Assembly (NCBI GenBank): GCA_965637545.1
Contig: OZ281498.1
Span: 27,652,001-27,716,000 of the forward strand
Reading direction: 5' to 3'
DNA: 64,000 bases
Source: Phallusia mammillata
Lineage: Eukaryota
Part shown: positions 1,874 through 41,377 of the stretch, piece after piece
Layout: each line of letters begins with the position of its first letter
Position numbering within the stretch: position 1 is the stretch's first letter
Made by a program: the position numbers and the translations under genes
The notes under the pieces: model-generated
Told to the model about the DNA's origin: nothing
The model's database searches: none
Seen by the model: only the letters and a program-made list of their open reading frames with translations

Positions 1874-2324
1874 TCCTGTTAACTGTTTTTTATTGTACAG
1901 TTTAACGAATATAATGTTTTTTTGAAAAAATAATTATGTTTTTGCTATAAAATAATATTTAATGATATTTTTAGGAACGGCTAGTTTAAAAGTATCATAT
2001 TTAACCGTTTAAATAGATAGGGTCAGCTACTTGCAATGGCCACTAGTGGCTCCAGCTGATCCATTTTTGTTTGCGTCGTTGCTATTTCAATGCACATAAC
2101 TGATTACTTACTGCGCGTGAACGAAATAAATGAATTGAGTTGGGCTAAAAACTCAAAATAACGGATAAATTATAAACTGCAACTGTAAGCAGTATTTTAA
2201 AAAATGTTGTTTGTTTAAGATGATTTTTTTGTAACTATTAATTTTGTAGATGAATAGTAACATTTGTGTTTTTACTTTCAAAATGTTAATTTTAAATGTT
2301 TTTAGATGATCTGGTTACAGTGCA

Positions 2325-5300
2325 ATGTTTTCTTTAATTTTTTGTTGTTTCCTGATATCATTGTTTAATTCATGTCATCCACAAAGCTGTGAATGTCCCA
2401 ACAATTGTTCAACAACATCTACTAATTTATCGGGAAAAACTAACCACTCTATCAGTTGTTCAATTGTTAATGATTCCAGACAATGTGGAAACTTCACAAA
2501 TATCCAAGTCTCACCCCCACTGGATCTTACTGTTTCTGGTTACGTCGAAGAGATTAATTCAGTCCGTTATGCTGCACTTAAAATCACCTGGAAACCACCA
2601 CAAGATGTCACTATCACCAACTTAAAAGCCTTTCAGATAAGTTTAAACTGTGTGAAAGGTCAATGTACCGGCTCCAAAAATGTGTTTTATTGCATAAACA
2701 ACCCACTCAGTTTCAACAAGCATGCCCGTGCGTCCTTTAACTACGACTGCATGTGTTATCGAGTACATCCCGGGGATGTTATTGAAGTTATTGTGGCCAG
2801 TCTACCCCACATGGCTGACACACATGCCTACAACATCAGCAAGGAATACACGATTGATTGTAACAAACTGCAAAATGGAGAAGCATCTGAATGTCTTAAA
2901 GTGAATGTAAAATCATGGTGTGTTGATAATGAAGTCAAAGTAGAAGTGAAATATCATGTGCCGGGCTTTTTTACTGATCGACAACTAGTTGTTCGTGGCG
3001 TCATCAAGGATAGTCAGGTATTGGAGGCGTATAAAAAATATACAATTCAAGATGTTGATGGGAAGTTTCCTGTTTATATTAATCAAACAAAGTTGGATAT
3101 TAGCAAAGACATTGAATTTGAATTGTCCGGAATTTACAAAATGCGAACACAAAGAGATGTTGCGGTGTTGAATATTTCATCTTGTTCAGTGCCTCTGGTT
3201 GTCAATGAACCAAAATTATTGACTCCTATTCTTGCACCTGTGCTGGTCATTGTGTTCTTTGTGATAGTTTCTACTATTGTGGCTTACTTCATCATCAGAA
3301 AAACATGTTTTCCGAAGTTTTTGAAGTTGTGCTGCCCCGCATGGTTCGTCAAACGTCTAAATCCCTCACAATTTTCTGCAAACCGGGAAGACGCAAACCA
3401 GGTGACCATGCGTGATGATGTAGGTTTTAAGGGGGGTGTGGATGAACTATCTGGTCCCCTTAAAGTTTTAGTCACGTTTGTTGAAGATCACCCAAAACAT
3501 AAAGATATTGTTCTCAAGTTTGCTGCTTACCTACATCATGACCTTGGCTTCGAAGTTATTTTAGAGCTTTGGCAGCAAGATGAAATTTACCAAGATTGTG
3601 CATCATGGATTGAAAAGGCAATTGACCAATCAGATAAGTGGATTGTTATTTGGTCACCAGGAGCCAGAAAAAGGTGGGATGAATTTGCCACATCGGACTG
3701 CCACAAGCAAGACTTATTTACACCGCTGCTGAAAAAAGCTAAAAAGGATTTGTTTTACGACAAAAACAAAGACCGGTATTTTTTCACTTATTTTGATTAT
3801 TGCTCCAGTTCGGACATTCCCAAGGTTTTCTGTGACTTAACATTTTGTAGATTCAAACTCATGCAAGACTTTAAAGAGCTTTACTTTGGATTATATGGAC
3901 AACCATTGTATCAGCCTGGCGTTAAATCTGTGGAGAAAAAAGTTGAGTTTTCAACTTATGCAAAACCTGATGTCACCAAGTACGGGCTGGGATTGAAACA
4001 AGCGGTATCGGAAATGTCAAAAATTGCAAAGGAAAATCATGAATGGTATTTGTACAAGCCCTCACCAGTGTTAGCACCGAAAAACACGGAGCACGAACCT
4101 ATAAGTATAAGTGATGATTTCGTTTGTGTCAATCACATGGATATCATTCCTCCATCTTCGCCGATCCTTGATGCAGGAGAATTCAAATATAAATCTCAAA
4201 GTTGTAATCCACTTAAGGTGCAAGAAAACACTTCAAGGGATGTTAAACCAGATAAGAATTACGACGACTTTGGTGAAAGTTTAGAAATCAGCGGTTTCAT
4301 AAGTGAAGAAGATTTTGCACTGCAGAAAATCGAAGAAGCTACTCAACCCAAACTGGAGCAGTGTTTAAGCGAGGTTTCACCAAATAAAGAAATAAAGTCG
4401 GAAAACAAAAACGTCCCCACATTCTCCAACCCGAGATTCCAACAACCTAATATTGGTGACATTCAAGACAGTGTGGCAACTGAGGAGTCGTTTAGGAGTA
4501 TTGAAGTTAGTTGTTTATCTGACACAGATGGCAATTTTACCCAAAATTTAACTAATATGCCAGGAAATGTTCTTCATTACATCCCAGCTGTAACCCATGA
4601 CAACAGAGCAAGGCAAATGTCAAGAGACACAAAGTTTAGGCAACAAAATGGTAAAACTGTTTGTGAACACATTGATACTGAGGAGTCATTCAAGAGCATT
4701 GAAATCAGTGGTTTGTCTGACATGAATTCTGCTTCGGCGAGACAGGTTCCAGCTCAAAAATCTGTTCACTTTTCCGACACAAGAACTCAGCAACATACAG
4801 AACATGAGGTTGTGGACTCGTTAGATGATGTGAATTTGGAGATGAGTTGCCTTTCTACTGTCCCTACTGATTTAAGAGATAATCAGATGCGACAACAGAT
4901 GCCATTCACACATCCTGGCAGAAAACTGAATGATCAACAAGCAAGTGCTCATACAAGTGAAGTTTCTGATTCCTTTCGGAGCATTGAAATCAGTTGTCTA
5001 TCAGATGGTAGTAAATCCTTTCCACAGAAAAAACCTGTACAGACAAACCACCTTTTTCCAAATCCCAATCCAGCTTCTAAAAACCAACAACTTCAAGTTC
5101 ATAGCGTGGCAGATTCTAATGAAGATTTAAATGACTCCATCCAAACCATAGAAATCAGTAAAGATTTTATATCTCAAAGTTTCAACCAAGGGGCATCTCC
5201 TAGTTCAGAAATTGGTCCCAGCATCGAAATAAGTCAATATTCTGGTGATTTTGGACCTGACAGTTTCACAGCAAATCACCCAGCAAGTAAAACTATAGAA

Positions 5301-5720
5301 AAGTTTGAAACTACAAACCAAGGTGTGGATTTAAATAAACATGTACAGTGGGGTAAATGTGATTCGTTTCAAAGTGTTGAAATTAGTCAGGAATATTCAG
5401 AGTCACTTTCAGTTCAAATGCTACCATCATTACATGATGCTGATCAAAAAGCTCCACAACACCCACGGACTTTACCATCAACATCCCAACCTCTGGATAC
5501 AAATGCAAGGAACAAAGAAACAGAAAATTTGCAACCTAGAAGGGGCTTCAATTTTTCTTTCGACCCCTCAATTAATGCTGATTCATTTCACTTCCGCAGC
5601 GACACAAGTGATTTTAACCAATATGTTGCCAGCGAGGAAGTTCAACCAAAAGTCATCATCGCCCCGATTGATATGGAGAATGATCCTTGGAAATCTTTGG
5701 CTTCATTAAACAAATTTTAG
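2325..5720 (+). CDS. IL-17 receptor-like type I membrane protein with SEFIR domain and long Ser-rich tail (single-exon ORF, 1131 aa)
   Basis: Hydrophobic Cys-rich signal peptide; FN3-like ectodomain (PPLDLTVSG...LKITWKPPQD...LKAFQISL); TM segment ILAPVLVIVFFVIVSTIVAYFII; SEFIR-type segment KVLVTFVEDHPKHKDIVLKFAAYLHHDLGFEVILELW...KWIVIWSPGA...YFDY...FKLMQDFKELYF. Orthology to IL17RA-E cannot be decided by eye. Confidence 0.9.
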   Translation: MFSLIFCCFLISLFNSCHPQSCECPNNCSTTSTNLSGKTNHSISCSIVNDSRQCGNFTNIQVSPPLDLTVSGYVEEINSVRYAALKITWKPPQDVTITNLKAFQISLNCVKGQCTGSKNVFYCINNPLSFNKHARASFNYDCMCYRVHPGDVIEVIVASLPHMADTHAYNISKEYTIDCNKLQNGEASECLKVNVKSWCVDNEVKVEVKYHVPGFFTDRQLVVRGVIKDSQVLEAYKKYTIQDVDGKFPVYINQTKLDISKDIEFELSGIYKMRTQRDVAVLNISSCSVPLVVNEPKLLTPILAPVLVIVFFVIVSTIVAYFIIRKTCFPKFLKLCCPAWFVKRLNPSQFSANREDANQVTMRDDVGFKGGVDELSGPLKVLVTFVEDHPKHKDIVLKFAAYLHHDLGFEVILELWQQDEIYQDCASWIEKAIDQSDKWIVIWSPGARKRWDEFATSDCHKQDLFTPLLKKAKKDLFYDKNKDRYFFTYFDYCSSSDIPKVFCDLTFCRFKLMQDFKELYFGLYGQPLYQPGVKSVEKKVEFSTYAKPDVTKYGLGLKQAVSEMSKIAKENHEWYLYKPSPVLAPKNTEHEPISISDDFVCVNHMDIIPPSSPILDAGEFKYKSQSCNPLKVQENTSRDVKPDKNYDDFGESLEISGFISEEDFALQKIEEATQPKLEQCLSEVSPNKEIKSENKNVPTFSNPRFQQPNIGDIQDSVATEESFRSIEVSCLSDTDGNFTQNLTNMPGNVLHYIPAVTHDNRARQMSRDTKFRQQNGKTVCEHIDTEESFKSIEISGLSDMNSASARQVPAQKSVHFSDTRTQQHTEHEVVDSLDDVNLEMSCLSTVPTDLRDNQMRQQMPFTHPGRKLNDQQASAHTSEVSDSFRSIEISCLSDGSKSFPQKKPVQTNHLFPNPNPASKNQQLQVHSVADSNEDLNDSIQTIEISKDFISQSFNQGASPSSEIGPSIEISQYSGDFGPDSFTANHPASKTIEKFETTNQGVDLNKHVQWGKCDSFQSVEISQEYSESLSVQMLPSLHDADQKAPQHPRTLPSTSQPLDTNARNKETENLQPRRGFNFSFDPSINADSFHFRSDTSDFNQYVASEEVQPKVIIAPIDMENDPWKSLASLNKF

Positions 5721-5727
5721 GTTTATA

Positions 5728-5905
5728 TAAGCTATTGCTGTCGGGCATACTATAGCAAGTTTATAGAGCTTTTCTGGCAAATGTATTTTTATTCCGATGT
5801 TTCGTCCTCCAATACAGGTCGCCTTCATCAGGGTAAATAACACTGAATGCGACTAGTACAGTGCACGATAAAATACTTGCCAGAAGAGCTCTATAAACTT
5901 GAAAT
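5728..5905. mobile_element. Penelope-like element terminal remnant with internal inversion and a degenerate hammerhead, in the 3' UTR of IL-17R-like 1
   Basis: Inverted arms caagtttatagagct(t)ttctggcaa / ttgccagaagagctctataaacttg; minus strand carries ccCTGATGAagg...cGAAAcaTCgg; related sequence at about 7960, 29090, 57990 and 63450. Confidence 0.6.
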
Positions 5906-8137: not shown

Positions 8138-10375
8138 GTGATGTATCGTTTGTTACATTTGATTTTCCTTCTATCAACTTTGTTGTGGTGTGGACATGTA
8201 ACTGGGCTGATGTGTCCGAAGGAAGGCGAATGTTTGGTCAGTTCCAGCAAAGGACCGATCAGGTGTATAACACAGGAGACCAAATGTTCAAATATAAACG
8301 ACACTCTTGCTCCTAGCCCAGTGGCCAAGCCAACTAAAGTAACTGTTGAAGTTGTAAAACCTGTCGGAAGTCAATACTCCAAAATCCAGATGCAGTTTTC
8401 GTGGCAACCTTCAACTAATGCCTTGCAAACGTTTCAAGCTTTCGAGATTGACGTTCAAAGAATGGGCATATTTATTTCTCAGGACAGAAACATTATGTCC
8501 AAGTTTTATTGTTTTCCTGATGGACAGAATTTGCAAGAACTCTTTCCTTTCACTGTAACTGATTGCTATGGAAACCTAACTAATGAAGTAATCGAGGCCG
8601 GGGACGACATTGATATATTTGTACTTAGCTACCCACTACAAAAAAAGTCTACAAGTTTAGCTGATATTCATTTACATGAAAAAGTATCTATTAAAACTTG
8701 CCGCAACTTACATTCCGATGGCCACCAACTGACAGAATTTTGCAGCTTGAACCTTTTCATAATTGAATATTTCTGTGAAAATGCGACATATCATTTTGGA
8801 TATCACATTCCAAGGTTGAACAATAAAACTACTAAAGCTGAACTAATTATTCAGAAAGGTGAAGAATATGAATCGAAATATCTTACTTCAGACAATCATG
8901 ATTACTACTATAAGCTTCCTGAAAACCATACAGCAATCATAACTGCAGAATTAGAGGTTGAAGGGATACCTCGCTCCCGTTTGCTTAAAATTCGTCGTAC
9001 AGAATGTGTTACTATCACTGAGGTTTCACCAAATCCAAAAATTGGGGTGACTCAGGGGTCCGTTATCGTCCCTATTGTTGTGGGGCTGTTTGTGGCAATT
9101 TTACTGCTGATTTTCTTAATACTTTGTATATGTCAACAACGTTTTAAAACTCCTGGCAAAAAGTTTTGTCTGTCTTGTACTAAGTCTTTAAAGCCCAACT
9201 CATCATCAGTTGAATCAGGATTAGGTGATGCTACGGTGATCAGTAATCCTAGTAACATGACTGTGTACATCGTATTTGTTGATGATCACCCAAAACACAA
9301 GGATATAATCCTTAAGTTTGCGTCGTTTCTACAGTGTGATTTAGGATTTCATGTTTTGCTTGAACTTTGGGAACAGGATGCGATCTACAAGGATTCTTTG
9401 ACTTGGATGGAAAATTCTTTAAACAAATCCGATAAAATCATCGTGGTTTGGTCACCGGGGGCAAAAAGAAGATGGGAGTCTCAAAATAAAGTTGATCAAA
9501 CTGACATGTTTTGTCCAGTTGTTAAGAAAATTAAAGGGGATCTTTTGATGAAAAGAAATACTGGGAAGTATTTTTGTGCCTTCTTTGACTATTGTTCAGA
9601 TACAGATGTCCCTAAAGCTTTCAGCGAGCTGTCGTTTTGCAACTTTAAGCTGATGAATCAATTTGAGGATCTTTACTTCAGGTTAACGACTTTGGAGAAG
9701 TTTCAGCCGGGAAAAGTTATTCACCAAAACAAAGTCACCACTAAAAGTTGTTTTACACACCAAGAAAATAAGTTTGGCAAAGTTTTGTCTGATGCTGTAG
9801 TTGAGATGTGTGACTTTGTGCAGTCAAACCCTGATTGGTCGGAGAACAAAGAAAAACAACTGGATATTTCTATCACAGAAGCAAATAAAATTGATGATGG
9901 TCCCTCACTGGTTAACACAATAAACCTTCCTCCATTGCCATCACTTAAAGTTGAAGCCAAATCTGTTAAACATAATGAAACATCTACAGCAAACTCTCAA
10001 ATCCCACCTCCACAATTAAATGAACCTGTGATTTTGGATGACAGCATTATAATGCCACTGGAAATTAGTGTGTTAACAGACAACATCAGTTTTGCGACAG
10101 AAAGTCTCCCGAGCCGCCAACCAACCGAACATGAGGAAGCCAAGATTGTGTTGAATCCAAACTCTGAAGAACAGAAGCCAGTGTCGGATAACTTCAAGGA
10201 CAGTGGGATAGGAAGTCCTGAACCTAACCCATTGTTTCATGTCTCTGCGTTTTCCTTTGCTGAAAGCGATATTGCAGACAATGCAGCTGCATACAGACCT
10301 GTCTGTATTGAACCTATAGACATGAAAAACGACCCATGGAATTCACTTGCACAAATTAACAATGTCAGTGTATAG
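8138..10375 (+). CDS. IL-17 receptor-like type I membrane protein with SEFIR domain, paralog 2 (single-exon ORF, 745 aa)
   Basis: Signal peptide; FN3-like ectodomain (MQFSWQPSTNALQTFQAFEIDV); TM segment VIVPIVVGLFVAILLLIFLILCI; SEFIR segment VYIVFVDDHPKHKDIILKFASFLQCDLGFHVLLELW...KIIVVWSPGA...FFDY...FKLMNQFEDLYF. Confidence 0.9.
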   Translation: MMYRLLHLIFLLSTLLWCGHVTGLMCPKEGECLVSSSKGPIRCITQETKCSNINDTLAPSPVAKPTKVTVEVVKPVGSQYSKIQMQFSWQPSTNALQTFQAFEIDVQRMGIFISQDRNIMSKFYCFPDGQNLQELFPFTVTDCYGNLTNEVIEAGDDIDIFVLSYPLQKKSTSLADIHLHEKVSIKTCRNLHSDGHQLTEFCSLNLFIIEYFCENATYHFGYHIPRLNNKTTKAELIIQKGEEYESKYLTSDNHDYYYKLPENHTAIITAELEVEGIPRSRLLKIRRTECVTITEVSPNPKIGVTQGSVIVPIVVGLFVAILLLIFLILCICQQRFKTPGKKFCLSCTKSLKPNSSSVESGLGDATVISNPSNMTVYIVFVDDHPKHKDIILKFASFLQCDLGFHVLLELWEQDAIYKDSLTWMENSLNKSDKIIVVWSPGAKRRWESQNKVDQTDMFCPVVKKIKGDLLMKRNTGKYFCAFFDYCSDTDVPKAFSELSFCNFKLMNQFEDLYFRLTTLEKFQPGKVIHQNKVTTKSCFTHQENKFGKVLSDAVVEMCDFVQSNPDWSENKEKQLDISITEANKIDDGPSLVNTINLPPLPSLKVEAKSVKHNETSTANSQIPPPQLNEPVILDDSIIMPLEISVLTDNISFATESLPSRQPTEHEEAKIVLNPNSEEQKPVSDNFKDSGIGSPEPNPLFHVSAFSFAESDIADNAAAYRPVCIEPIDMKNDPWNSLAQINNVSV

Positions 10376-30900: not shown

Positions 30901-33900
30901 AGAAAACAAATCGAGTAAAATCAATATGTGTCCCCTTCAGGGAAGGGGACCCATAATAAGTTTTACTCACAGAAAGAGATTGTCCATCACCCAAATGTAG
31001 TTGGGAACACTAGAGTCAGGAAGATATCGACCAAATATTTCCACGATAGCTTGCTTTTCCTTGTAAAATCCTGTTAAAACATGAAGTATTGTACAAGTAT
31101 TGTAGGCTTTACTAATTTAGGATGATTAGCTCAAATGTTTAAACTAGTGATTAATATTGTGCTGCTACAGTTTTTACTACCAAACAAAATGACTCCTCTG
31201 TAAAAATAGTTACATAGTTTATACTTCAGTGTTAAGGTTAATGACACGGTCACACAGAGTTACATTCTACCTCCATGGGAGATGACTCGTTTGTAATTCT
31301 GAATTGCTCTCCCGTCAATCCTGTAGTCTTCGTTTCCAATAACAACATTTTCCCAAACAGGATCTTCCTTCATTGTTGCAGGAATCGTGGGAAGCAAGAT
31401 TTCTGGGTCTGTTTTCTCACCATTGCTGGAAGCTGCAGAGTAACATGGGACATTACAATGTTGAAAGAATGAAGAAGTTACACAAACTAACCTGCTGCTG
31501 AAGAACTGTTTGAACCGATGCTTGGTGCAGATGGTCCATCAACTGAAACAAAAAAGGACGAGAAGGAACTGATACGAGTGTGTAATAATTTTCTTAGTTT
31601 AATAAATTGACTTAAACCATGGACAGTAATAGATGCCTTAAAAACATCTTATAATGCATTACATCTAATTCTGGAACTAGCAATAACTAAAACCCATTTT
31701 CATCGAAAACAGAATTTATTGTTTTTACCAATATACTCGTAAATAAATACAGAAACTTTGAACTGTTAAAATATTAACAGGCTATTGCAACATGCCAATT
31801 TTTTTTAATTGTGTTGTTATGTTGTATCACCATGCTACACAACAATTTTATAAACTGTACCTTGTGTTTCCTGTGTAGGGGTTTGAACATTAATGTCATC
31901 GAGAGCAATTGAGAGGACCAGAGATGATGGAGGAACAATTGATCTTCGTCGTAAAGAGGAAGTTGGTGAGACCGTCTCGTTTGTTGCATCCCGGTCATCT
32001 GCGTCGTTCTTTAGATCAATGCTCACCAACTCGGCCTTGGCTGAAATCCAAAGGCAATTTTGTTTTTAGTTTATTCATTTATGCGACCTGTTTATTCACA
32101 AACAGAGGAATCTAAACAGTTGCACAAATAATTAAATTATGCTATAATCCATATCATTTTTTTAACAAATGGATTTCTGTATTGGATTCTTCTGTATTTT
32201 TTCTATTCTGAATTTCTTCCTAACATGGTAAAATTAGTCTGGGTAAAATTATAGTTCGTACAATTTTATTTCCAGCAAACATGGTCATACCTGCGTTGAA
32301 CTGTTCCTGTGTTTCATTTTCATCCTCTGAGGAGTCGGTCAACATATCAATGCTTCCAATAGTGTCGTATCTCACACGATTTGTTTCTCTGAAACCAAAA
32401 CAGGTGAGATATTTAATTGAGTTATATGTTTCTGACTACAGGATTTTAGTTAATAATTATTTTGCTCATCAACTTATTTGGACATAACCAAAGCCAGAAA
32501 TCAGCAAAAGTTTAAAAAGCCAACTCTATAAACTATTCAAATGTCCGTTTAAGCAAAGACATAAATATGACAAGACCAGTGGTGGGGTTCAGCCGGTTCG
32601 CACCGGTTCTATAGAACCGTCTCACGAAATTTTATGAGATCAGCGAACCGGTTAGCATTACTGGTTACTGTCAATGGACTTTTTGTAACAGAACCGCCTA
32701 AAGATGTGACTTTTGTGATAGAAACGGGTGACAAAAAATTTGAATCCCACCACTGGACAAGACCACCATTCATATTCAGCATTTAAGTGTTATTTCACCT
32801 TGTAAATTCTTGTTCTTCTTCTGTGTTTGTTCCAGCCTCATCTGGTTGCAGATGCAATTTCTTCAAAGGTTTTACTGAAACTGGGTCGGCAAAAATCTGA
32901 TCGCCCACATTCAGGTCCTGGAATGAGTTGGTAGGGACACGATATATCTGATCTACATGTTCACTTGTGGCCTCATCTGTCACTTGCACCAGATCAGCTT
33001 GGTCATGCGTCTTGGCATCAGATTCTTCTGTTGCCAGTTCAATTTTGTCAGCAATATCTGTTATCAACTGAGGGTTGTTGTCTATTTCACCAGTGAAAGA
33101 AAAGGGATCAAAATCACCTGCTGCAGTAACGTCAGATTGAACCACATCTTCCAGCTGCTGTTCTGAATTGACATGATTATCAACCAGTACCTCTTGAACC
33201 TCAGTGGTGTCTTGATTTTGTGCACCAGCCTCATCAACATGAACATTGTTTGGAGCATTCAATAGACTTCCCTCGTTGGTTGTGAAATCTTGATTTTGTA
33301 TTTCAACCTCATGAACAGCTCCTTGAGTATAAGGCACACTCTCCTCAACTGTGGTGGAATCTGGTCCTTTCTCACCAAACAGAGATTCATCAATATGACC
33401 TGGAAGAAGATTAACTTCAGTTGTCACTTCAACATCTGACACCTCCTTGAGTGGAACTGTTTCATCAAGTTTAACTGGGATATTTTGTTCTTCAAGTTCT
33501 GCAGCATTTTCTGTTTGTTCTAACACAATTTCCTCGATGCCTGTAGAATGTAGTTCTTGTTCACCAAACAGGGATTCATCAACTACTACTCGTTTATTTT
33601 GTTTGTCGGATTCTGTACAACTTTCATTGTCATCAGGCTGCAAATTTATGGCTTTGTCAACTGGCATTCCATCTTCTGGAACACTTGTTTGTGACTTTAT
33701 ACTGGTCACCATACTCTCTACTTGGTTTGCAGGGGTCAGGCTGTCTATAAGTTTTGTGTCAGTGTTGGGATTTCCATTATTCAGTGCCACATCATCACTA
33801 GCAGGAGCTTCAACCAACACAGCAATGTTTTCCCTTTCCAGCATAAAGTCAGCTATCATTGGTTTGAGTAAATTATTTTCATCCATCAATTTTTCTGCAT

Positions 33901-36900
33901 CTCTGTTTTCCTCTTGGGTAGGTTCAGTGGGTTGAAATGTCATTTCTTCATTGCCAATCATGGGTGCATCAGTATTTAGGGGAAATTCTGAGGCATCTCT
34001 GTCAATACTACTTTCTTTAGCATTGTTTTGCAAATTTGGCACCGGCTCACTGGTAGGGAGATTCACTGGGTCCAACAGGTCTTCAAATTCCAGTGTGTTT
34101 GCAGATATTGTATGTTGTTCATCATAGACTTGCTCTTCCTTGTATGTCTCTGTTTTTGCGGTGATCTCAGTTGATACAGCAGTAACCATTTCTTCCAGAT
34201 GTTTTTCCTCATCATGTGTAACAAGGTCATCTTCGTTCATAGACACTTGGCAGTTTTTAGCTATCTCTGCATCTTCAACATTTTCTTGCTCTTGTACACT
34301 GGTATCCAAAGGTGTTAACACCTCCTCTTTGAAAATGTCATGATGTTCCACATTTTGTGCCGATCCAATACCAAGAACTTCAAATGATTTGCTGTCAAGA
34401 TTAGTATCAATGTCAGGTGAAGAATCCATGTTATTTGTATCATCGATGTTGTTGGGTTTAACATGCACTGGAACTGTAATATATTTTTCTGTTGTTTCTC
34501 CCTCGCCAAAAGACAACAAATTGTTATTATATTGGGAAATGACTTCTTGATTGTGTGTGACATCTGGTGTTTCAGTATCAATGTCATGTTGACCTTGAAG
34601 CATTGGAGTAGGACCTGTTTGGGACTGAGTTGCTGTTTCATCGTCAAACATATTACTAGGCCCTTTGTCTGGAGTTATTGAAGAAACGTTACTGGTTTCA
34701 TCTGTTGTTTGTATTTCGGGCAACATATTGACATCATTTTCTGCATTTGTTACTGGAATAAAATGTTCAAACAACTTGTCACATGGCTTGATTTCACCTG
34801 GCTCTAGCAACTCTACATTCTGACTTTCCTCATGTGAATGGTCAATGGTAGTTGTTCCAACGCTATCTTCTGTCACAGCAAAATCAACATTACGGCTCGG
34901 CTCAAGTGTATGGACATCACCGCTACTTGGTTGGTCACCTTTCTTCACCAAAGAAGTCTCACCATCACCATCGCTTTCCTCATTGGCATGAACAATAGTA
35001 GTTTTTCCAATGCTATTTTCCATCCCGACTAAATCACCATCACTGCTTTCATGAATGGCATCTTGTATTGAATCTCCTTCTAAGTTTTCATTCCGTTCTA
35101 TTGTATTAATTGTCCAATCCGTTAAATCATTATCGGTAACTTCAGCTTTAAGATCTGTCACATTCAATGGTTTTGGTGTCTCCAACATATCTTTATCATT
35201 TTCTGTTGGCACTGAACCTTTATCTTGAATCAAATTTTCTCCAGAACTTACAATAGTGGCTTCATTGAAGAAACCATCATTTTCTTTCTCATCTGTAGTA
35301 CTGGTTGTTTGATCTTCTGAATTTTGTGTCTGGGATGTATAGACATCAATTAGGTCAGTATCAGCGATTTTCGATTCTCCAGATAATATCAGTTGTTCAT
35401 TAGTGGTGCTTGGTTCAGTATATGTGTCTTTCCAGTCCTCATAGTCGCTAGTTTGATCAAGAATGCACCAGGAACCCTCTGTGGTTGTTGGGCTTTCATC
35501 CAAATCCTTTTCTAATTGTGATTTTCCGTCTTCAGGAAAATCTGATTCTAGTGGTTCCTGCAAACTTGAAACACTGTGTGAAGTTGGGTTTGTTGAGAGC
35601 AATGTCTCAATCTCAGCATTACCGGGAGCCTCTGGTGGAGCCAAACATGTGTCTAGTGATTCCTCTATGCCACTGGAATCGAAACCAGCAGATCTTTCTC
35701 CCCATAAGTGGTTATATTGAGTGGCCAGATCATCATCATCATCATCCAGTTCACTATCCATTAGATCTTTCATATTTTCTTCAACCAAATCTTTAATTTC
35801 TTCAAAACTTTTTTCACTTAATCCATCTGACTCCTGATCCTCGTCATTTTCTTCCGGCTCCGACTCCTCCTCAATGACAGGCAGCGTGTTGATTGGCTGC
35901 CCACTTTGCTGGAATTCCTCCCAATCGGAATCAAATGAAACCAACGTCCCAGAGCCCACAACTGATCGCAGATTATTTAAGTTGGTCTGACCAGCAAAAA
36001 GAGATTCCTCAACAAACACCTCATTATTCATTTGCTGTAAGTCATTGTTCAGAGCATTTTCTACTTTCGCTGAGTCATTATCTTCAAGCATGTCATCAGG
36101 CTCCATAAAAACTGTGCTGGGAACAATGTTACTCTGTACATTCACCGGTTCATGTCGCAGGTATGCAGCGTTCAAATCGATTTTTCTCTTTTCGCGAAGT
36201 GGAGCAACAGGTGTGCTTTCGAATGGATTGTCATCGAATTCGAGAGATATCTGACTGATGTTATCTCCAAGTTGCATTTCACCACAATCAGAATCATCCA
36301 AATCAGACACGTTTATCTGATCCGAACCAAACAAACTTCCCTCTTCTGAAGATGATGGCAATCGTTCTTCATCCTCATGAAGTTCAACAGGAGCAGTTTC
36401 CACTTTATTTATGAAGCTGTTCTTCTTATCAGTTTCTGCTTTTGCGACGGCATCGTTGGTTTTAATTATTAGACTATCATCTGTTACATTTGACTCCTCT
36501 GTATTTTGTTGAACAAAACTTCCATTTTCATTTGGTGATTCACTTTTTTCTTCAAGCAGATTTTGCAAACTACTTTTGTTAACAAAAGTTTGATCCGAAT
36601 TCCCTTGCGATCCAGATTCACTTATTCCTTTTAGGTTCATGTTTGTGTCTTGGGTATCAATTAAGACAGATTGATTTTCTGTGTCAAAGCCAAGAGGTAT
36701 TTCAAGGACATTTGTGTCATTCAGAAGGCCAGGATTTATTTGAATATTGAGGCCAATCTGTTCACAGTCCCCAGTCACACTGGCCACATTAAACTCTTCT
36801 TCAATTTCTGCTACGTTTATAGCAATTTTCTTTTTTCCTCTTGGTGGAGCCATTGGCATGTTTTCTGACAGATTCTCAACCAGTTTTGTCGCTTCTTGAT

Positions 36901-39900
36901 TTTCGATGCTGAACATTGCCGTTGCTTCCAAATCATAGTTAATATCAGTTACATGTTTTAGATTGGTGCTGCAAATGCTTGATGATATCTCCTCCTCATC
37001 ATGATTGGGTGTAACATCTAGCAGCATATTTCCTTGTTCCTTGTCTTCCTTTTCCGTGGTGTCCACTTTGGTTTGCTCAATACTTTCAAATTCCAAATCC
37101 TTTAATGTTGCATCTGGCTGCAATTCCTCTGTGGTGAGTGTGTCAGGATGCACGTTGAAATTGTCAAGTGGGAATTGTTCTGCTGAAGATGAAGTTTCTG
37201 TCAGTTCTAAAGTTGGGAAATCAGGTTTCGTCGACATTACAAGGTCAACAAGTTCATTATTCTGTGGAGGATCCATAGGTTTTGTAAATAAGTCTGCTTC
37301 ACCATTCTGATCAACCCCTTCATCGACGACTTTATTGACATCTAATAACTCTTCCTCAAATTTCTCTTTTTTAACAGACTTCTTTTTTCCTCTAGGTGGC
37401 GGTGCAGGATTCCCTTCATCAAGATGTGTGTGCAGTTGTAAAGTTTCAGGTGCAGCAGGACTACTTTTTTCTTCCTCAATGCCTGGGATCAGCACATCTA
37501 CTACATTGGTATTTGTTTGAGGGACTTGATCTTCAGTCCACTTAGTAGTGCTGTAGGGTTGTAGCTCATTTTCAAGGTGACCTTCAGTTAACTCATCCTC
37601 CTGGACAACAGTGTTGTCAGGAATATCAGGCGAAATAAGCAGATTTGCATTAGAATCTGGTTCCTTTGTAGTCATAACAACAGCACTATTATCCTCTATT
37701 TCATTCGGGAAACCAAGCTGTTGACTTGTTGAAAGTTCTAAAGTAGTGAATAGGTTTTGGTCAAAAGACATGTCAACAACCAAAGTAGAATCTGCTGGAG
37801 TTTCAGGCACAGATGTTGATGAACTAATTTCATTGCTACCCCTTGAACTTGTAGTCATTGGTGCAGTTCCAAATGTGTTGTTGTCATGTTCAAGAGAATC
37901 TTGACTTACGTTGTCACCATTTTGCATTTCATCAAATCCGGTGTTCGCCACTTCCAGTTCATTGCCAGGGATTTCTGAATCCACAAGATTCTCACCAGTG
38001 TTTTCTTCTAAAGAAAAAGGGTTCGTTGGCGTATGTGTCTGGAACAAATCTAAATTATAGCTATCTTGTTGTTTCCCAATGTCCATCTCCTGTTTTGAGT
38101 TGGGTTCTGAAGCTTTGTTTTCCACAGAAAGAAGAGAAAATGTCTGAATATCTGCCTGATCATCTGGTGAGGATTGCAACAAATCAATTTCGGTGAGTGT
38201 TTGGACACCATTATTCAGCACATTTGTTTCATTGTCAGGTAACTGTTGAAACATGTCAAGTTCATTTACTGTTTCTGGGTGGGCAATTTCAGTTAACTCA
38301 TCAGAGGGTTTGTTGTCTTGGGCAATTGGTTGTCTCTTCTTTTTTCCTCTTGGAGGAGGAGCAGGATTCATAACTTCAACATCTGGATGCTTCCTTTCAT
38401 CACTGATACCACTTGTGGAGAATATCGACTGATTTTCTAGCAGTTCTTTGATATTAAGCGTCTCATGAAAAATACCCTGACCAGACTTATCACTTGTGGA
38501 CGCTGACTGATTTGTATCCAGATGGCCAATACTCATCTCATGAGATATATCACTTGGTAATTGTTGTGAATCAATTGGCCCTAAATGTAGTGAAGCATCG
38601 CAAAACACAGGTGATGTTCTTTCTTCACTTGTGGACACAAGAGGTGTCGGCTGACTATCAGGCATTGTACTGCTAAATGGGTGTTCCACTTGATCAATGA
38701 GGTCTGTATCAAATTTCTGACTTGGTGCTAAATCTGAATCAGCTTCAAAAAAGTTTAGGCTTTGTTCACCAACATCAGGAATTAGTGTTGGTGCAGCAAC
38801 TTGTTTTGCTGCGTCTGTTGTTTCCCCAATTTCACCCAAAAGGGATAGATTTGCTGGAAGCTGCAAACTATATTCATCCATGTTTAGTTCTTCATGTAAA
38901 TGATTTGTTTGAAGATTCTGTTCGGAGTTTAATGGGGCCGATGCAGTTTCCACTTGGAGTAGTGATGACCACTGGGTGTCACCATGCGCAGGTTCACTGC
39001 CACTACTGGTTTCCGCAACAACACTTTCCTGCAAGTCACCATTTTCAAGTGGAGTGATACCTGAACTGCTTAATACATTGACTGGTTCTCCTAGTTCAGG
39101 TTGGAACAGGTTTTCACTCTTTGACATTGTGGCATCAAGTGGTAAAGAGCTTTCTATAGCTTCTGGCAATGAATCATTTGCAATTGAATTTTCCACTGAT
39201 GTTGTAATATCAACCTCTGTTTCCATTTGGTCATTATCCGGCAAATTAGTATCAATGTCTGCAGTGATCGGCGTATCCTGTTTCAAGTCGCTATTGATTT
39301 GTTCCTGTTCTGGTGGATCCACTGTTAGTTGACTTTCTAATGGTTGGACCACAGTATCAACTTCAGTACATTGATTGCTTGGTTCCATTTGCAATGCACT
39401 TGTTTCTGCATCAGAAGCAACACCTTCAGTAAAATGCATATCCTCATTTTTTATCATGTTTACACCGTCATCATCTGTTGTTGGAATACTTATATTATCC
39501 TCTTTTGCTTTGGTGACAACATCTTCTGCAAGTTCATTTAGGTCTGCATTACCTCCACAATCTTCAGTATTTGCTTCACTTGCATCAAGTTGGGCATCTC
39601 CATCTGGAAGCAAACTTTGACCCCTCAGAGTTTCACTGATTTGTTGATTATCTGGATTTGCTTGTGCTAGCTGCAAGGTGTTTTCATGTTCATGTGGTTC
39701 TTCTTCTATACCATCGCTTTCATTCTTAGCTGGGACATGTTCATGTAAGACCTGAGAGCTGTTAATGTCTTCTTCAAATGTCGGGTTTTGATGTTCTTGT
39801 TTCGAATCTGAAACTTCATTATTTCCATCAGAATCAGACGAACATAATGATTTCACACAGTTTCCCATTTCCACCTCACTTTCTGGTTTTCCCTCCTTTG

Positions 39901-41377
39901 CCTGGTCATCTGACATATTTGTCCAGGACATGTTGTCTTCCATCTCTGATTTGTTTACCTCACCAACAATGTAAACATCATCTACAGATAGCAGTCCATT
40001 GTTTACTTGATTCAAGTCAGGCTCAAACATTCCTTCCTGTCCATCAAATGGAGAATCATTGCTTTCAGTTTGACTCATAACTGGAAATAAATTACTTTTT
40101 GAAGTTTCCGAGCTCTCTACATTATCCACATTGCTCAACAGGTGACCTTTAGTTGACACTGTAACAATAGAATCAGATTCTATTATTGATTCAGGTTTAT
40201 TGACATCACAAAGAGTGGTGATGTCATCATTTCGTTGGGACTCAGCTGGGTGAATATTAACTCTTTCGTCAACAAAACCGATTTCATCCGATGCTCTGGA
40301 CAGTTTACCACCTTCCAATGGACCTGCACTGATTGCGTCGGTTAAATTTATAGAGTTCAATCCATCCTGGCTGTCTTTAGAACTCTCTAATGCCTCACTT
40401 CCATCCATAAGTGATAGAAAATCCAAATTATTGCCACTATGGCCTGTGGTTAAATTGTCGGTCTCTTGATCAACAGTTTTTTGCACTTCTCTGGTTTCAG
40501 TTTTTTCTTGTTCGGAACCAAATATGTCCATGAAATTATCACCACTGATTAAGTTTGTTTTGTTGGTGGTAAATCCATTTTCAGCATCTATTGAATTTGT
40601 GCCACTTTGTGCTGGTTCTTTATGTTCTGCAATTAATTGAAAATCAACTTGGTTTGTGGGTGACATCGGAAAAGCAGAAGTCAACGCAAAATCTAGTCCT
40701 AAGTTATTATCAGGTTTCATGTTATCATCCATGTTTGGCACAGATGTTGAGTCAGCAGTTTTGTTGTTGGCCTGGTTATCTAACATCAACCAATCAAAAT
40801 TAGAAGCAGGCTCAGCATGTGATGGGTTGTGTAAGTTTTCTGTAGTTTCGGCAACATTTTGGGTTGCAAAGAAATCCACTAAATTACTTGTTTCAGATTG
40901 TTGTGCTGCTGTATCAGCTAGTGAAGGCACAATTCCAAATACTGGCTCATTCCGTTCCACAGCTTGCACTTTGGTTGTTGGTGGGTTGTCAAATAAACCT
41001 AGTAAATCTAAAGGCTGATTCTGGGTCTCGTTAACTGGAAAAGCAGCAGAGTTTTCACCTTGAACTTGTGAGGTTGAGGTGATGTCTAACAAACTAAATG
41101 CATCAAATTCTTGCCCTGTACTTGTCGCTCCACTTTCTTGATCATTCCCTAATGATAACAAATCATAATAGTTTTCATTTTGTTGCACAGATTGTCCGCT
41201 AGAATTGAAATCAGTTGTATCCAAAGTGCTGAATATATCCAATACTTCATCCGAGTTTGTTACAATTGCCTCATTTCCCAATTGAACTGGTGTTTGTGTA
41301 GACAAAGTAATCTCGCTTAAAGCTGAAGTGTCATCAGAAGCACCATTGACATCACAATGACCGTAGGGTGATGTCAT
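27952..41377 (-). CDS. Giant acidic low-complexity protein with C-terminal BNIP2-N plus BCH (CRAL-TRIO-like) domain; BMCC1/PRUNE2-C-terminus/caytaxin-like
   Basis: 8.58-kb exon 32799-41378, then small exons encoding WENVVIGNEDYRIDGRAIQNYKRVISHG|GFYKEKQAIVEIFGRYLPDSSVPNYIWVMDNLFL|YLVSTLELLVQHQDYVVVFFNG...SWLKK...LRKNLKGFYVVQSSFYFKTL...|RKVFKKTKNVKNHTELKQFIPTDFLFIPQDI, ending QVNKKWWWSR*; matches the BNIP2/ATCAY/PRUNE2 BCH consensus; splice phases consistent. Confidence 0.88.
28076..28199 (-). mobile_element. hAT MITE family A copy (shortened)
   Basis: cagtagtggaattca ... tgaatcccaccactg; degenerate TSD catagttt / catggttc. Confidence 0.75.
28807..28902. repeat. 48-bp tandem duplication spanning an exon 3' end and splice donor of the BCH gene
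   Basis: ttacctggctata(c/t)cttgtgggataaa(a/g)aggaaatctgtgggaatgaa x2. Confidence 0.9.
29087..29167 (+). mobile_element. Penelope-like remnant (5'-truncated)
   Basis: ggacatcgaaacgtcggaataaaaatacatttgcccgaagagctctataaacttgacattatgcctggcagcaatagcttat; same family as 5728-5905. Confidence 0.6.
30122..30957. mobile_element. Non-autonomous DNA element with internal tandem repeats of about 120 bp and a terminal hairpin (Helentron/HINE-like)
   Basis: Inverted atgggtcccc / ggggacccat; 3-4 copies of ggggtaaatattggggctaca...aaatttcatccaaatc; terminal hairpin tatgtgtccccttc-aggg-aaggggacccata. Confidence 0.55.
32577..32755 (+). mobile_element. hAT MITE family A copy
   Basis: Family A TIRs; perfect 8-bp TSD gacaagac. 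Confidence 0.9.

What the first reader, a model, noticed from the sequence alone, without database searches (positions are those of the whole stretch)
4278..5387. Array of about 8 pLxIS-like (IRF-recruitment) motifs in the tail of an IL-17 receptor-like protein
Seen: after the SEFIR domain the otherwise low-complexity tail repeats one short motif: SLEIS (4278), SIEVS (4497), SIEIS (4695), NLEMS (4833), SIEIS (4980), TIEIS (5145), SIEIS (5220) and SVEIS (5373). Several are preceded by (D/E)SF(R/K/Q) and followed by (C/G)LSD, while the spacers are unrelated. Established: STING (LLIS), MAVS (LAIS), TRIF (LEIS) and TASL use a pLxIS motif whose Ser is phosphorylated by TBK1/IKK-family kinases to dock IRF3/IRF5; vertebrate IL-17Rs signal through Act1/TRAF6 and are not known to carry such arrays. 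Inference: this receptor may be a multivalent IRF-docking platform that links IL-17-type cytokine sensing directly to IRF transcription in an invertebrate chordate without classical interferons.
Basis: partly seen in the sequence, partly recalled or inferred. Interest (0 to 1): 0.85.

Follow-up and report, generated by a model that had tools for sequence, protein, structure and literature searches.

The report
Eight-copy docking motif in IL-17 receptor tail
A sea-squirt (Phallusia mammillata) IL-17-receptor-like gene carries eight selected copies of a five-residue Ser-hydrophobic-Glu-hydrophobic-Ser motif in its floppy intracellular tail, probably a phosphorylation-switched multi-site landing pad for a signalling protein whose identity (IRF, TRAF or other) is still open.

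Summary
The window is Phallusia mammillata. Positions 2325-5720 (+) are one intronless, apparently transcribed gene of 1131 aa (UniProt A0A6F9DFC3, "IL-17 receptor A-like").

Its disordered tail holds eight [LIV]E[IVM]S cores at the stated coordinates, against 0.11 expected from shuffles (0 of 20000 reach 8). Codons differ synonymously between copies while the spacers are unrelated, so the peptide motif is under selection.

The array lies in a roughly 390-aa insertion absent from the neighbouring paralogues. No ortholog carries it. A single copy in the next paralogue is conserved in a 41%-identical ortholog.

The IRF (pLxIS) reading is neither shown nor excluded:
- Only 1 of 8 copies is a strict pLxIS, and the invariant Glu is not a pLxIS feature.
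- The complex prediction gave no answer.
- The genome does encode IRF association domains that keep the phosphate-binding Arg, and a TBK1 homolog.
- The first Ser of the motif sits in the published optimal TBK1/IKKε context.
- A TRAF-type Px(Q/E)xT reading fits about as well.

Best reading: a lineage-specific, multivalent, IKK-family-phosphorylated docking array whose partner is unresolved. This scan noted the same stretch once before (s1-405484).

The parts
2325..5720 (+). Intronless CDS of the IL-17 receptor A-like protein (1131 aa)
   Evidence: Single ORF. Identical in length to UniProt A0A6F9DFC3 of Phallusia mammillata, with 2 aa differences.
2306..5841 (+). Extent of transcriptome-size contigs colinear with the genome (putative mRNA)
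   Evidence: A 3536-nt contig in run X1, and contigs in X5, X9 and X13 from other studies, cover only this span. There is no depth upstream of 2306 and there are no joints inside the CDS. The tool marks 'RNA' as a guess.
2325..2384 (+). Predicted signal peptide (hydrophobic N-terminus, about aa 1-20)
   Evidence: Read directly from the translation; inference.
2511..2879 (+). IL-17R fibronectin-III-like ectodomain D1 (aa 63-185, weak match)
   Evidence: Pfam PF16556, E=2.6e-4, 21.1 bits, below the 26-bit cut-off. The precomputed annotation of P0001 lists PF16556.
3231..3299 (+). Transmembrane helix (aa 303-325)
   Evidence: A 23-residue hydrophobic stretch followed by a basic residue; inference from sequence.
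3462..3893 (+). SEFIR domain (aa 380-523)
   Evidence: Pfam PF08357, E=5.8e-27, 95.3 bits. AF2 pLDDT >90.
4173..5639 (+). Intrinsically disordered tail (about aa 617-1105) that holds the array; about 390 aa of it are an insertion relative to the paralogues
   Evidence: AF2 pLDDT <50 throughout. Alignment with the two + strand paralogues. DNA is unique in the genome.
4278..4292 (+). Motif copy 1, SLEIS (the only strict pLxIS)
4497..4511 (+). Motif copy 2, SIEVS, in the context ESFR-SIEVS-CLSD
4695..4709 (+). Motif copy 3, SIEIS, in the context ESFK-SIEIS-GLSD
4833..4847 (+). Motif copy 4, NLEMS, followed by CLST
4980..4994 (+). Motif copy 5, SIEIS, in the context DSFR-SIEIS-CLSD
5145..5159 (+). 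Motif copy 6, TIEIS
5220..5234 (+). Motif copy 7, SIEIS
5373..5387 (+). Motif copy 8, SVEIS, in the context DSFQ-SVEIS
5658..5717 (+). Family-conserved C-terminal element (A-P-I-D-x-x-x-D-P-W-x-S-L-x-x-L-N), predicted helix
   Evidence: Shared with the paralogues and with 43 of 150 homologs, including vertebrate IL-17RA-type proteins. AF2 pLDDT 72-87.
10055..10069 (+). Single PLEIS motif in the neighbouring paralogue (CDS 8141-10375)
   Evidence: The island around it is conserved in ortholog P0029 at 41% overall identity.

Best explanation
Window 2325-5720 encodes a lineage-specific paralogue of the tunicate IL-17 receptor family. Its disordered cytoplasmic tail has amplified one short linear motif to eight copies. 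The core is S/T-Φ-E-Φ-S, and the fullest form is (D/E)-S-F-x-S-Φ-E-Φ-S-(C/G)-L-S-D.

Proposed mechanism, all inferred:
1. Ligand-driven clustering brings an IKK-family kinase of TBK1/IKKε type to the receptor complex.
2. The kinase phosphorylates the Ser residues that flank the Φ-E-Φ core. The first Ser lies in the optimal TBK1/IKKε context.
3. The eight phospho-motifs then act together as a high-avidity platform that recruits several copies of one downstream signalling protein.

The partner is unresolved. An IRF association domain (pLxIS-like docking) and a TRAF MATH domain (Px(Q/E)xT-like docking) are the two leading candidates.

Shown: the gene, its domains, the array, its disorder, selection on the motif and its lineage specificity. 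Inferred: phosphorylation, the kinase, docking and the partner.
For: Array statistics: 8 observed against 0.11 expected, with 0 of 20000 shuffles reaching 8.

Selection on the peptide, not on DNA:
- At the invariant Glu and final Ser, pairwise codon comparisons give 42 identical, 14 synonymous and 0 non-synonymous differences.
- Copies 2, 3 and 5 show 15 synonymous against 8 non-synonymous codon differences over 13 codons.
- The spacers are unrelated.

Disorder: pLDDT is below 50 across the array in p1 and across the single motif in the paralogue. Neither motif is modelled as docked on the SEFIR domain, which fits a motif that binds a separate protein.

A single copy is a conserved island (L-D-D-S-x-I-M-P-Φ-E-Φ-S-V-Φ-T-acidic) between the neighbouring paralogue and its ortholog P0029, at 41% overall identity.

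Other tunicate relatives carry 14 such cores in 93 tails, against about 5 expected.

Kinase fit:
- TBK1/IKKε need a hydrophobic residue at +1, strongly prefer F/Y at -2 and prefer a bulky aliphatic residue at +3. The optimal test peptide has the core Y-D-S-L-D-W (PMC3408500).
- F-x-S-Φ-E-Φ occurs 4 times against 0.37 expected, with 0 of 5000 shuffles reaching 4.
- Seven of eight copies have S/T followed by Φ-x-Φ.

Context: a TBK1 homolog is present, and TBK1/IKKε are recruited to the mammalian IL-17R complex (PMC7459424).

The gene appears expressed as a colinear transcript in contig sets from 4 studies and exists as an mRNA-derived UniProt entry.
Against: - No phosphorylation or binding data exist.
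- The kinase preference is taken from human enzymes.
- The invariant Glu and the invariant last Ser are not explained by the kinase consensus alone.
- Copy 4 has Asn at the first position.
- In the paralogue and several relatives the first position is Pro, so the first-Ser site is not a family-wide feature.
- No ortholog of the array-bearing tail was found, so long-term conservation of the array itself is untested.
- AF2 shows no pLDDT bump at the motifs.
Confidence: 0.55

Rival explanations
1. One reading: the motifs are pLxIS-type sites. Their last Ser is phosphorylated by TBK1/IKK, and each then docks the IAD of an IRF. The receptor would be a multivalent IRF-activating platform.
For: - All eight copies fit a relaxed p-[LIV]-x-[IVM]-S, and copy 1 is a strict pLxIS identical to the TRIF core LEIS (TRIF 207-210 per PMC9440496).
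- In tunicate relatives the core is mostly L-E-I-S.
- The hydrophobic anchors and the Ser are the invariant positions, as in pLxIS (PMC7672473).
- There are at least 8 IAD loci. The best one is closest to IRF5/IRF4 and keeps K-R-L-C-Q-S-R. I equate its Arg with IRF3 R285, which contacts the phosphoserine (PMC7672473); that mapping is from memory.
- A TBK1 homolog is present.
- A Glu at x is compatible with binding a basic surface.
Against: - Seven of eight copies replace the otherwise invariant Leu, or the Ile, of pLxIS.
- Glu is invariant although x is free in pLxIS.
- The last Ser is followed by C/G/K/Q, not by the hydrophobic +1 residue that TBK1 requires on peptides (PMC3408500). STING and MAVS share this deviation (my recollection of their sequences).
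- IL-17R signalling has no known IRF branch.
- The STING ligand-binding domain was not found in this genome, so no second pLxIS-type adaptor could be compared.
- The complex prediction gave no answer.
Confidence: 0.22
2. The motifs are TRAF1/2/3/5-type MATH-domain binding sites of the minor Px(Q/E)xT class, with S/T/P at P-2, E at P0 and S at P+2. They would work without phosphorylation. Eight low-affinity sites would give avidity for trimeric TRAFs and allow Act1-independent or inhibitory TRAF recruitment.
For: - The consensus Px(Q/E)xT is a recognised minor TRAF1/2/3/5 motif, with TANK P-I-Q-C-T as the structural example (PMC6125299).
- [PST]-Φ-E-Φ-S is seen in 7 of 8 copies. The paralogue and several relatives have Pro at P-2.
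- The invariant Glu matches the most conserved TRAF-motif position, P0.
- TRAF3 binds the distal tail of mammalian IL-17RA directly (PMC6610456).
- The genome has many TRAF MATH exons, including a TRAF4 ortholog.
Against: - The major motif Px(Q/E)E and the minor Px(Q/E)xxD are not met by any copy of the repeated core.
- P+1 is always a bulky hydrophobic residue. In the examples I recall it is E, A or C (TANK has C, PMC6125299).
- The two invariant hydrophobic positions and the frequent Phe at -2 are unexplained.
- P0 is never Gln and P+2 is never Thr in eight copies, which is odd for a Q/E and T consensus.
Confidence: 0.15
3. The Phe-containing copies are Atg8/LC3-interacting regions of the optineurin type (acidic-S-F-x-x-I/V). 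The array would target the receptor to autophagic or endolysosomal turnover. Alternatively the motifs are SUMO-interacting motifs.
For: - Copies 2, 3, 5 and 8 match the loose LIR pattern [EDST]..[WFY]xx[ILV], with a Ser just before the Phe as in the TBK1-regulated optineurin LIR (the optineurin comparison is from my own knowledge).
- TIEIS and the paralogue's PLEIS match an ELM-style SIM pattern (regex from memory).
Against: - Only 4 of 8 copies have the aromatic residue, and 3 of those have a basic residue at X1, which the stricter LIR pattern excludes. One of eight passes.
- The conserved single motif of the paralogue and its ortholog has no aromatic residue.
- Only 1 of 8 copies passes the SIM pattern, and the core has two hydrophobic residues rather than three or four.
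Confidence: 0.05
4. The array is a by-product of internal duplications in a fast-evolving, possibly redundant paralogue and has no specific function of its own.
For: - The gene is an orphan long branch in a tandem cluster of six paralogues.
- No ortholog keeps the array.
- Copies 2, 3 and 5 still show 67-83% DNA identity over 46 nt.
Against: - The spacers have diverged beyond recognition while all eight cores are intact.
- The invariant residues show only synonymous codon differences.
- The single-copy version is conserved across species in the sister paralogue.
- The gene appears transcribed and has an intact 1131-codon frame.
Confidence: 0.06

Closest known systems
pLxIS adaptor motifs of STING, MAVS, TRIF and TASL (vertebrates)
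   Same: A short hydrophilic-Φ-x-Φ-Ser motif in a disordered part of an innate-immune signalling protein. Copy 1 and most tunicate relatives read L-E-I-S, as TRIF does. The Ser and both hydrophobic positions are invariant.
   Different: - There are eight copies instead of one.
- Leu is replaced by Ile or Val in six copies, and Ile by Val or Met in two.
- Glu is invariant.
- The motif sits on a cytokine receptor rather than on an adaptor.
- No phosphorylation or IRF binding has been shown.
- The pLxIS-IRF axis is so far described in vertebrates and their viruses.
TRAF1/2/3/5-binding motifs (Px(Q/E)E, Px(Q/E)xxD, Px(Q/E)xT) in TNFR-family tails, TANK, LMP1, and the TRAF3-binding distal tail of IL-17RA
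   Same: P/S/T at -2, Glu at 0 and a hydroxyl residue at +2. Multiple low-affinity sites on a receptor tail. TRAFs are the established effectors of IL-17R signalling.
   Different: The major and PxQxxD consensus motifs are not met. P+1 is always a bulky hydrophobic residue. The motif never has Gln or Thr. Both hydrophobic positions are invariant, which TRAF motifs do not require.
Optimal TBK1/IKKε substrate motif (TBK1-Tide, core Y-D-S-L-D-W)
   Same: F at -2, a hydrophobic residue at +1, an acidic residue at +2 and an aliphatic residue at +3 around the first Ser of copies 2, 3, 5 and 8. The +1 and +3 preferences are met in seven copies.
   Different: It is a kinase preference, not a docking motif. 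It does not explain the invariant Glu or the last Ser. It was measured on human enzymes.
Vertebrate IL-17RA cytoplasmic architecture (SEFIR, SEFIR extension, distal regulatory domain)
   Same: SEFIR plus a helical extension, a post-extension Φ-x-Φ-P-P element, a long disordered distal tail, and a conserved C-terminal D-P-Φ-x-x-L-x-x-L helix.
   Different: Vertebrate and other tunicate IL-17RA-type tails in the searches have no motif array. The two fish hits with LEIS/IEIS align to the L-x-I-P-P-V-L-E-C element and are coincidental.

Membership tests
IL-17 receptor family (SEFIR receptors) | Cytoplasmic SEFIR domain | tested here: met
   PF08357, 95.3 bits against a cut-off of 23, aa 380-523. 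AF2 pLDDT >90.
IL-17 receptor family (SEFIR receptors) | Type I membrane topology with an FnIII-like IL-17R ectodomain | tested here: inconclusive
   The signal-peptide-like N-terminus and one TM helix are read from the sequence. PF16556 scores 21.1 bits, below the 26-bit cut-off. Full-length alignments reach Ciona IL-17RA and Clavelina IL-17RA-like proteins.
pLxIS IRF-recruitment motif | Sequence hydrophilic-L-x-I-S | tested here: not met
   It is strict in 1 of 8 copies (SLEIS). The other seven have I or V for L, or V or M for I. All eight fit only a relaxed pattern.
pLxIS IRF-recruitment motif | Ser phosphorylated by TBK1/IKK-family kinase on stimulation | not testable with these tools
   Only context is available. 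A TBK1 homolog is present. The last Ser lacks a hydrophobic +1 residue, while the first Ser has the optimal context (PMC3408500).
pLxIS IRF-recruitment motif | Phospho-motif binds the basic surface of an IRF association domain | tested here: inconclusive
   Complex prediction of IAD (L017) with tail aa 776-811 scored 0.01 against a mark of 0.34. The tool returned 'no answer'. Phosphoserine could not be modelled.
pLxIS IRF-recruitment motif | A reader is present: IRF with IAD keeping the phosphate-binding Arg (human IRF3 R285) | tested here: met
   There are 12 IAD exon matches, 10 over the cut-off. The R-L-C-Q stretch is kept in L017, L018, L019 and L021 and aligns to the same stretch of IRF4/IRF5. 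Equating this Arg with IRF3 R285 rests on my memory of the IRF3 sequence. The role of R285 is from PMC7672473.
pLxIS IRF-recruitment motif | Conservation of the motif in orthologs | tested here: inconclusive
   No ortholog of the array-bearing tail was found. The single motif of the sister paralogue is conserved in P0029.
TRAF1/2/3/5-binding motif | Major Px(Q/E)E or minor Px(Q/E)xxD | tested here: not met
   No repeated core matches either. The only hits are ATEE at aa 718 (overlapping the upstream flank of copy 2) and ASEE at aa 1102, far from any copy.
TRAF1/2/3/5-binding motif | Minor Px(Q/E)xT | tested here: inconclusive
   [PST]-x-E-x-S is present in 7 of 8 copies and in the paralogue. 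Ser replaces Thr, and Ser or Thr replaces Pro. Binding was not tested.
TBK1/IKKε substrate consensus | Hydrophobic +1 (absolute), F/Y at -2 (strong), bulky aliphatic +3 (minor) | tested here: met
   The full pattern is met in copies 2, 3, 5 and 8 (4 against 0.37 expected). The +1 and +3 preferences with an S/T acceptor are met in 7 of 8 copies (the consensus is from PMC3408500).
LIR (Atg8-interacting) motif | [W/F/Y]-x-x-[L/I/V] with acidic N-flank and no basic X1 | tested here: not met
   The loose pattern is met in 4 of 8 copies and the strict pattern in 1 of 8 (regexes from memory of ELM).

The most novel reading that the evidence does not exclude
An invertebrate chordate without interferons wires an IL-17-type cytokine receptor directly to IRF transcription factors. 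It would do so through an eight-fold array of TBK1/IKK-phosphorylated pLxIS-like motifs. The pLxIS-IRF docking principle would then predate vertebrates and could sit on a receptor rather than on an adaptor.
Probability: 0.2. Interest if true: 0.85.

Novelty: new variant of a known kind. Interest (0 to 1): 0.55.

Why it matters
IL-17 receptors are thought to signal through SEFIR-Act1-TRAF. Their long distal tails are poorly understood even in mammals.

Here one tunicate paralogue has multiplied a single selected five-residue motif eight times. That gives an unusually clean handle for finding what the distal tail binds.

If the partner is an IRF, the pLxIS docking principle would reach beyond vertebrates, and cytokine sensing would link to IRFs without an adaptor. 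If it is a TRAF, it would show direct, avidity-driven TRAF capture by an IL-17R.

Either way the array is a natural multivalent bait for pull-down experiments. It is also a test case for how disordered receptor tails evolve new signalling capacity by motif amplification.

Tried and rejected
1. Complex prediction of a Phallusia IRF IAD (L017:1408-2073:-) with tail aa 776-811 returned no answer (score 0.01). It is not evidence either way.

2. Ortholog searches for the array all came back blank:
- A whole-protein word search found only the protein itself and one distant relative.
- A tail-restricted word search found only the protein itself.
- The tail as a stand-alone query found nothing.
- An exhaustive HMMER search over 1.84 billion representatives gave 250 SEFIR relatives, none with more than two cores.

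3. A genome-wide pattern search for the extended motif found the four known copies plus 11 hits in short open frames, against 5 control hits. These are noise.

4. The STING ligand-binding domain was not found in six-frame search, so no second candidate pLxIS carrier could be compared. This does not prove absence.

5. AF2 of both cytoplasmic domains with a 51-sequence alignment gave pLDDT below 50 at the motifs. I rejected the idea of an intramolecular SEFIR-binding motif.

6. Two fish IL-17RA proteins have LEIS or IEIS just after the SEFIR extension. On inspection these align with the vertebrate L-x-I-P-P-V-L-E-C element, so they are not a conserved Ser motif.

7. The following were not met by the repeated core: TRAF6 PxExx(Ar/Ac), β-TrCP DSGxxS, SIM, and strict LIR (only copy 8 passes).

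8. The C-terminus of one Phallusia IRF (L019, Y-S-I-E-N-S-V-D) resembles the IRF3 S-S-L-E-N-T-V-D site. That comparison rests on my memory of the human sequence, and the PDB alignment did not extend that far. It is a lead only.

Full report
**What is there**

The window is Phallusia mammillata, contig C5:27652001-27716000. Positions 2325-5720 (+) are one uninterrupted ORF of 1131 aa. It equals UniProt A0A6F9DFC3, "Interleukin-17 receptor A-like", apart from two residues.

Pfam finds a SEFIR domain at aa 380-523 (95 bits). It also finds a sub-threshold IL-17R FnIII D1 match at aa 63-185. The sequence shows a signal-peptide-like N-terminus and one TM helix at aa 303-325. Everything after aa 325 is therefore cytoplasmic.

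Transcriptome-sized contig sets from four studies cover 2306-5841 colinearly. None covers the 1100 bases upstream. This fits an intronless mRNA, although the tool labels 'RNA' as a guess.

The eight motifs are at exactly the stated coordinates. [LIV]E[IVM]S occurs 8 times in the 571-aa tail, against 0.11 in shuffles, and 0 of 20000 shuffles reach 8.

The flanks are as described. [DE]-S-F-[RKQ] precedes copies 2, 3, 5 and 8. [CG]-L-S-D follows copies 2, 3 and 5.

DNA similarity between copies is limited to 28-46 nt around the motif. TRF finds no tandem repeat, and the tail DNA is unique in the genome.

Codon use differs between copies while the residues stay the same. Ser is encoded by TCG, TCA, TCC, AGT or AGC, Arg by AGG or CGG, and Leu by TTA, TTG, CTA or CTT. 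At the invariant Glu and last Ser there are 14 synonymous and 0 non-synonymous pairwise codon differences. The copies are therefore old and are held by selection on the peptide.

**Structural context**

AlphaFold2 with a 51-sequence alignment folds SEFIR plus its helical extension with high confidence. It leaves about aa 617-1105 disordered, with pLDDT below 50 and no bumps at the motifs. It models the last ~25 residues with pLDDT 72-87, ending in a short helix. The neighbouring paralogue behaves the same way, and its single motif is also in disorder.

This is the signature of a short linear motif read by a separate protein. I dropped the idea that the motif docks back on its own SEFIR domain.

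**Evolution**

The gene lies in a tandem cluster of six intronless SEFIR receptor genes. The array sits in a roughly 390-aa insertion relative to the two + strand paralogues. The downstream paralogue (8141-10375) has one PLEIS. The upstream paralogue has A-E-I-S at a comparable place.

In a tree of 43 tunicate relatives the 1131-aa protein is an orphan long branch. An exhaustive search and two tail-directed searches found no protein with the array.

The downstream paralogue does have a clear ortholog, P0029, at 41% identity. In that pair the island L-D-D-S-x-I-M-P-Φ-E-Φ-S-V-Φ-T-acidic is conserved within an otherwise diverged tail.

Across 93 homolog tails the core occurs 14 times, against about 5 expected. 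Most occurrences are in tunicates and most read L-E-I-S. They are not at one alignable position. Two fish IL-17RA hits turned out to be variants of the L-x-I-P-P-V-L-E-C element.

The motif is therefore a tunicate family feature that this one gene amplified. The amplification itself is so far seen in a single species.

**How it most likely works**

Every position of S/T-Φ-E-Φ-S is constrained, which points to a specific reader. Three published consensus motifs bear on it.

(a) pLxIS. This is a hydrophilic residue, then L-x-I-S, with the Ser phosphorylated and bound by IRF3 R285 (PMC7672473; TRIF 207-210 per PMC9440496). It explains both hydrophobic anchors and the invariant last Ser. However, only copy 1 is strict, and the invariant Glu is unexplained.

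(b) The TBK1/IKKε substrate optimum. It requires a hydrophobic residue at +1, strongly prefers F/Y at -2 and prefers a bulky aliphatic residue at +3. The optimal test peptide has the core Y-D-S-L-D-W (PMC3408500). The first Ser fits this strikingly well. F-x-S-Φ-E-Φ occurs 4 times against 0.37 expected, and 7 of 8 copies have S/T-Φ-x-Φ. The last Ser is followed by C, G, K or Q and fits poorly.

(c) The minor TRAF1/2/3/5 motif Px(Q/E)xT, with TANK P-I-Q-C-T as the example (PMC6125299). It explains S/T/P at the first position, the invariant Glu and a hydroxyl residue at +2. It does not explain the two hydrophobic positions, and the motif never shows Gln or Thr.

The necessary parts are all in the genome:
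- at least 8 IRF IAD loci
- IADs that keep the Arg of the R-L-C-Q stretch, which I equate with IRF3 R285 from memory of the IRF3 sequence
- a TBK1 homolog
- many TRAF MATH exons

In mammals TBK1/IKKε are recruited to the IL-17R signalosome (PMC7459424), and TRAF3 binds the distal IL-17RA tail (PMC6610456).

Taken together, my best reading is an IKK-family-phosphorylated, multivalent docking array (confidence about 0.55). Within it I put the IRF partner at about 0.2 and a phosphorylation-independent TRAF reading at about 0.15. LIR or SIM readings, and a purely neutral origin, are each about 0.05.

**What failed**

The tool states this is not evidence. The STING ligand-binding domain was not detected. 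The extended motif occurs nowhere else in the genome in a real open frame.

**Verdict**

The IL-17R assignment is sound. The IRF-docking interpretation is a legitimate but unproven hypothesis, and its sequence fit is no better than that of a TRAF-type motif.

The new point from this work is that the first Ser of the motif, rather than the pLxIS Ser, lies in an optimal TBK1/IKKε context. I rate the finding as a new variant of a known kind of receptor, of moderate interest. It gives a clean experimental handle: peptide pull-downs and kinase assays.

Noticed in passing
window 5658-5717 and 10310-10372: There is a family-wide C-terminal element, (L)-A/V-P-I/L-D/E-x-x-x-D/N-P-W/M/L-x-x-L-x-x-L/I-N/Q. 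It is present in 43 of 150 SEFIR-receptor homologs, including Ciona IL-17RA and vertebrate IL-17RA-type proteins (E-D-P-L-x-A-L-A-R-L-Q-E-E-L-F). AF2 models it as a helix with pLDDT 72-87 in both receptors although it follows a long disordered tail. Its function is unknown. DP[FW] also resembles an AP-2 appendage-binding motif (my own knowledge).
   Followed up: partly
G000:C5:27635218-27662375 (window -16782 to 10375) and G000:C8:12875771-12910516: Six intronless SEFIR receptor genes of 535-1131 aa lie in one tandem cluster, three on each strand. A second cluster of at least six SEFIR exons or ORFs of about 200-270 aa lies on contig C8.
   Followed up: partly
window 8141-10375: The neighbouring paralogue (744 aa) has QLDIS (aa 573), PLEIS (aa 639) and a DSGIGS β-TrCP-like degron (aa 687). 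Against its ortholog P0029 three tail islands are conserved: the PLEIS island, H-V-S-A-F-S-F-A, and the C-terminal I-E-P-I-D-M...P-W-x-S-L-A-Q-I-N.
   Followed up: partly
window ~4080-4180 and homologs: A post-SEFIR-extension element Φ-x-Φ-(x)-P-P is conserved from tunicates (I-I-P-P, I-V-P-P) to vertebrate IL-17RA (I-P-P-V-L-E-C-x-P). In a few proteins it happens to read LEIS, VEVS or IEIS.
   Followed up: partly
L019 (G000:C6:25530274-25533615), L017-L024: The IRF family is expanded, with 12 IAD exon matches including three tandem copies on C6. The C-termini share Φ-S-x-x-N-S-Φ-D-x-Φ-Φ. L019 reads Y-S-I-E-N-S-V-D-W-L-I, which resembles both the receptor motif and, from memory, the IRF3 S385/S386 site.
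   Followed up: partly
window 5808-5872: Contig depth spikes (up to about 520 against 33 over the CDS), and there are many short contigs with loose ends. This suggests a short dispersed repeat just 3' of the stop codon, inside or next to the 3' UTR.
   Followed up: no
G000:C4:17302524-17329662 and C4:6772749-6813971: There are clusters of TRAF-type MATH exons, several with in-frame stops. This suggests a lineage-specific TRAF expansion that includes pseudogenes. C2:22955449-22955829 is a clear TRAF4 ortholog.
   Followed up: partly
window 32795-41377 (-): A single 2860-aa acidic, Ser/Glu/Asp-rich ORF with repeated P-A-P-P-P-R-G-K-K-K elements. It was not examined.
   Followed up: no
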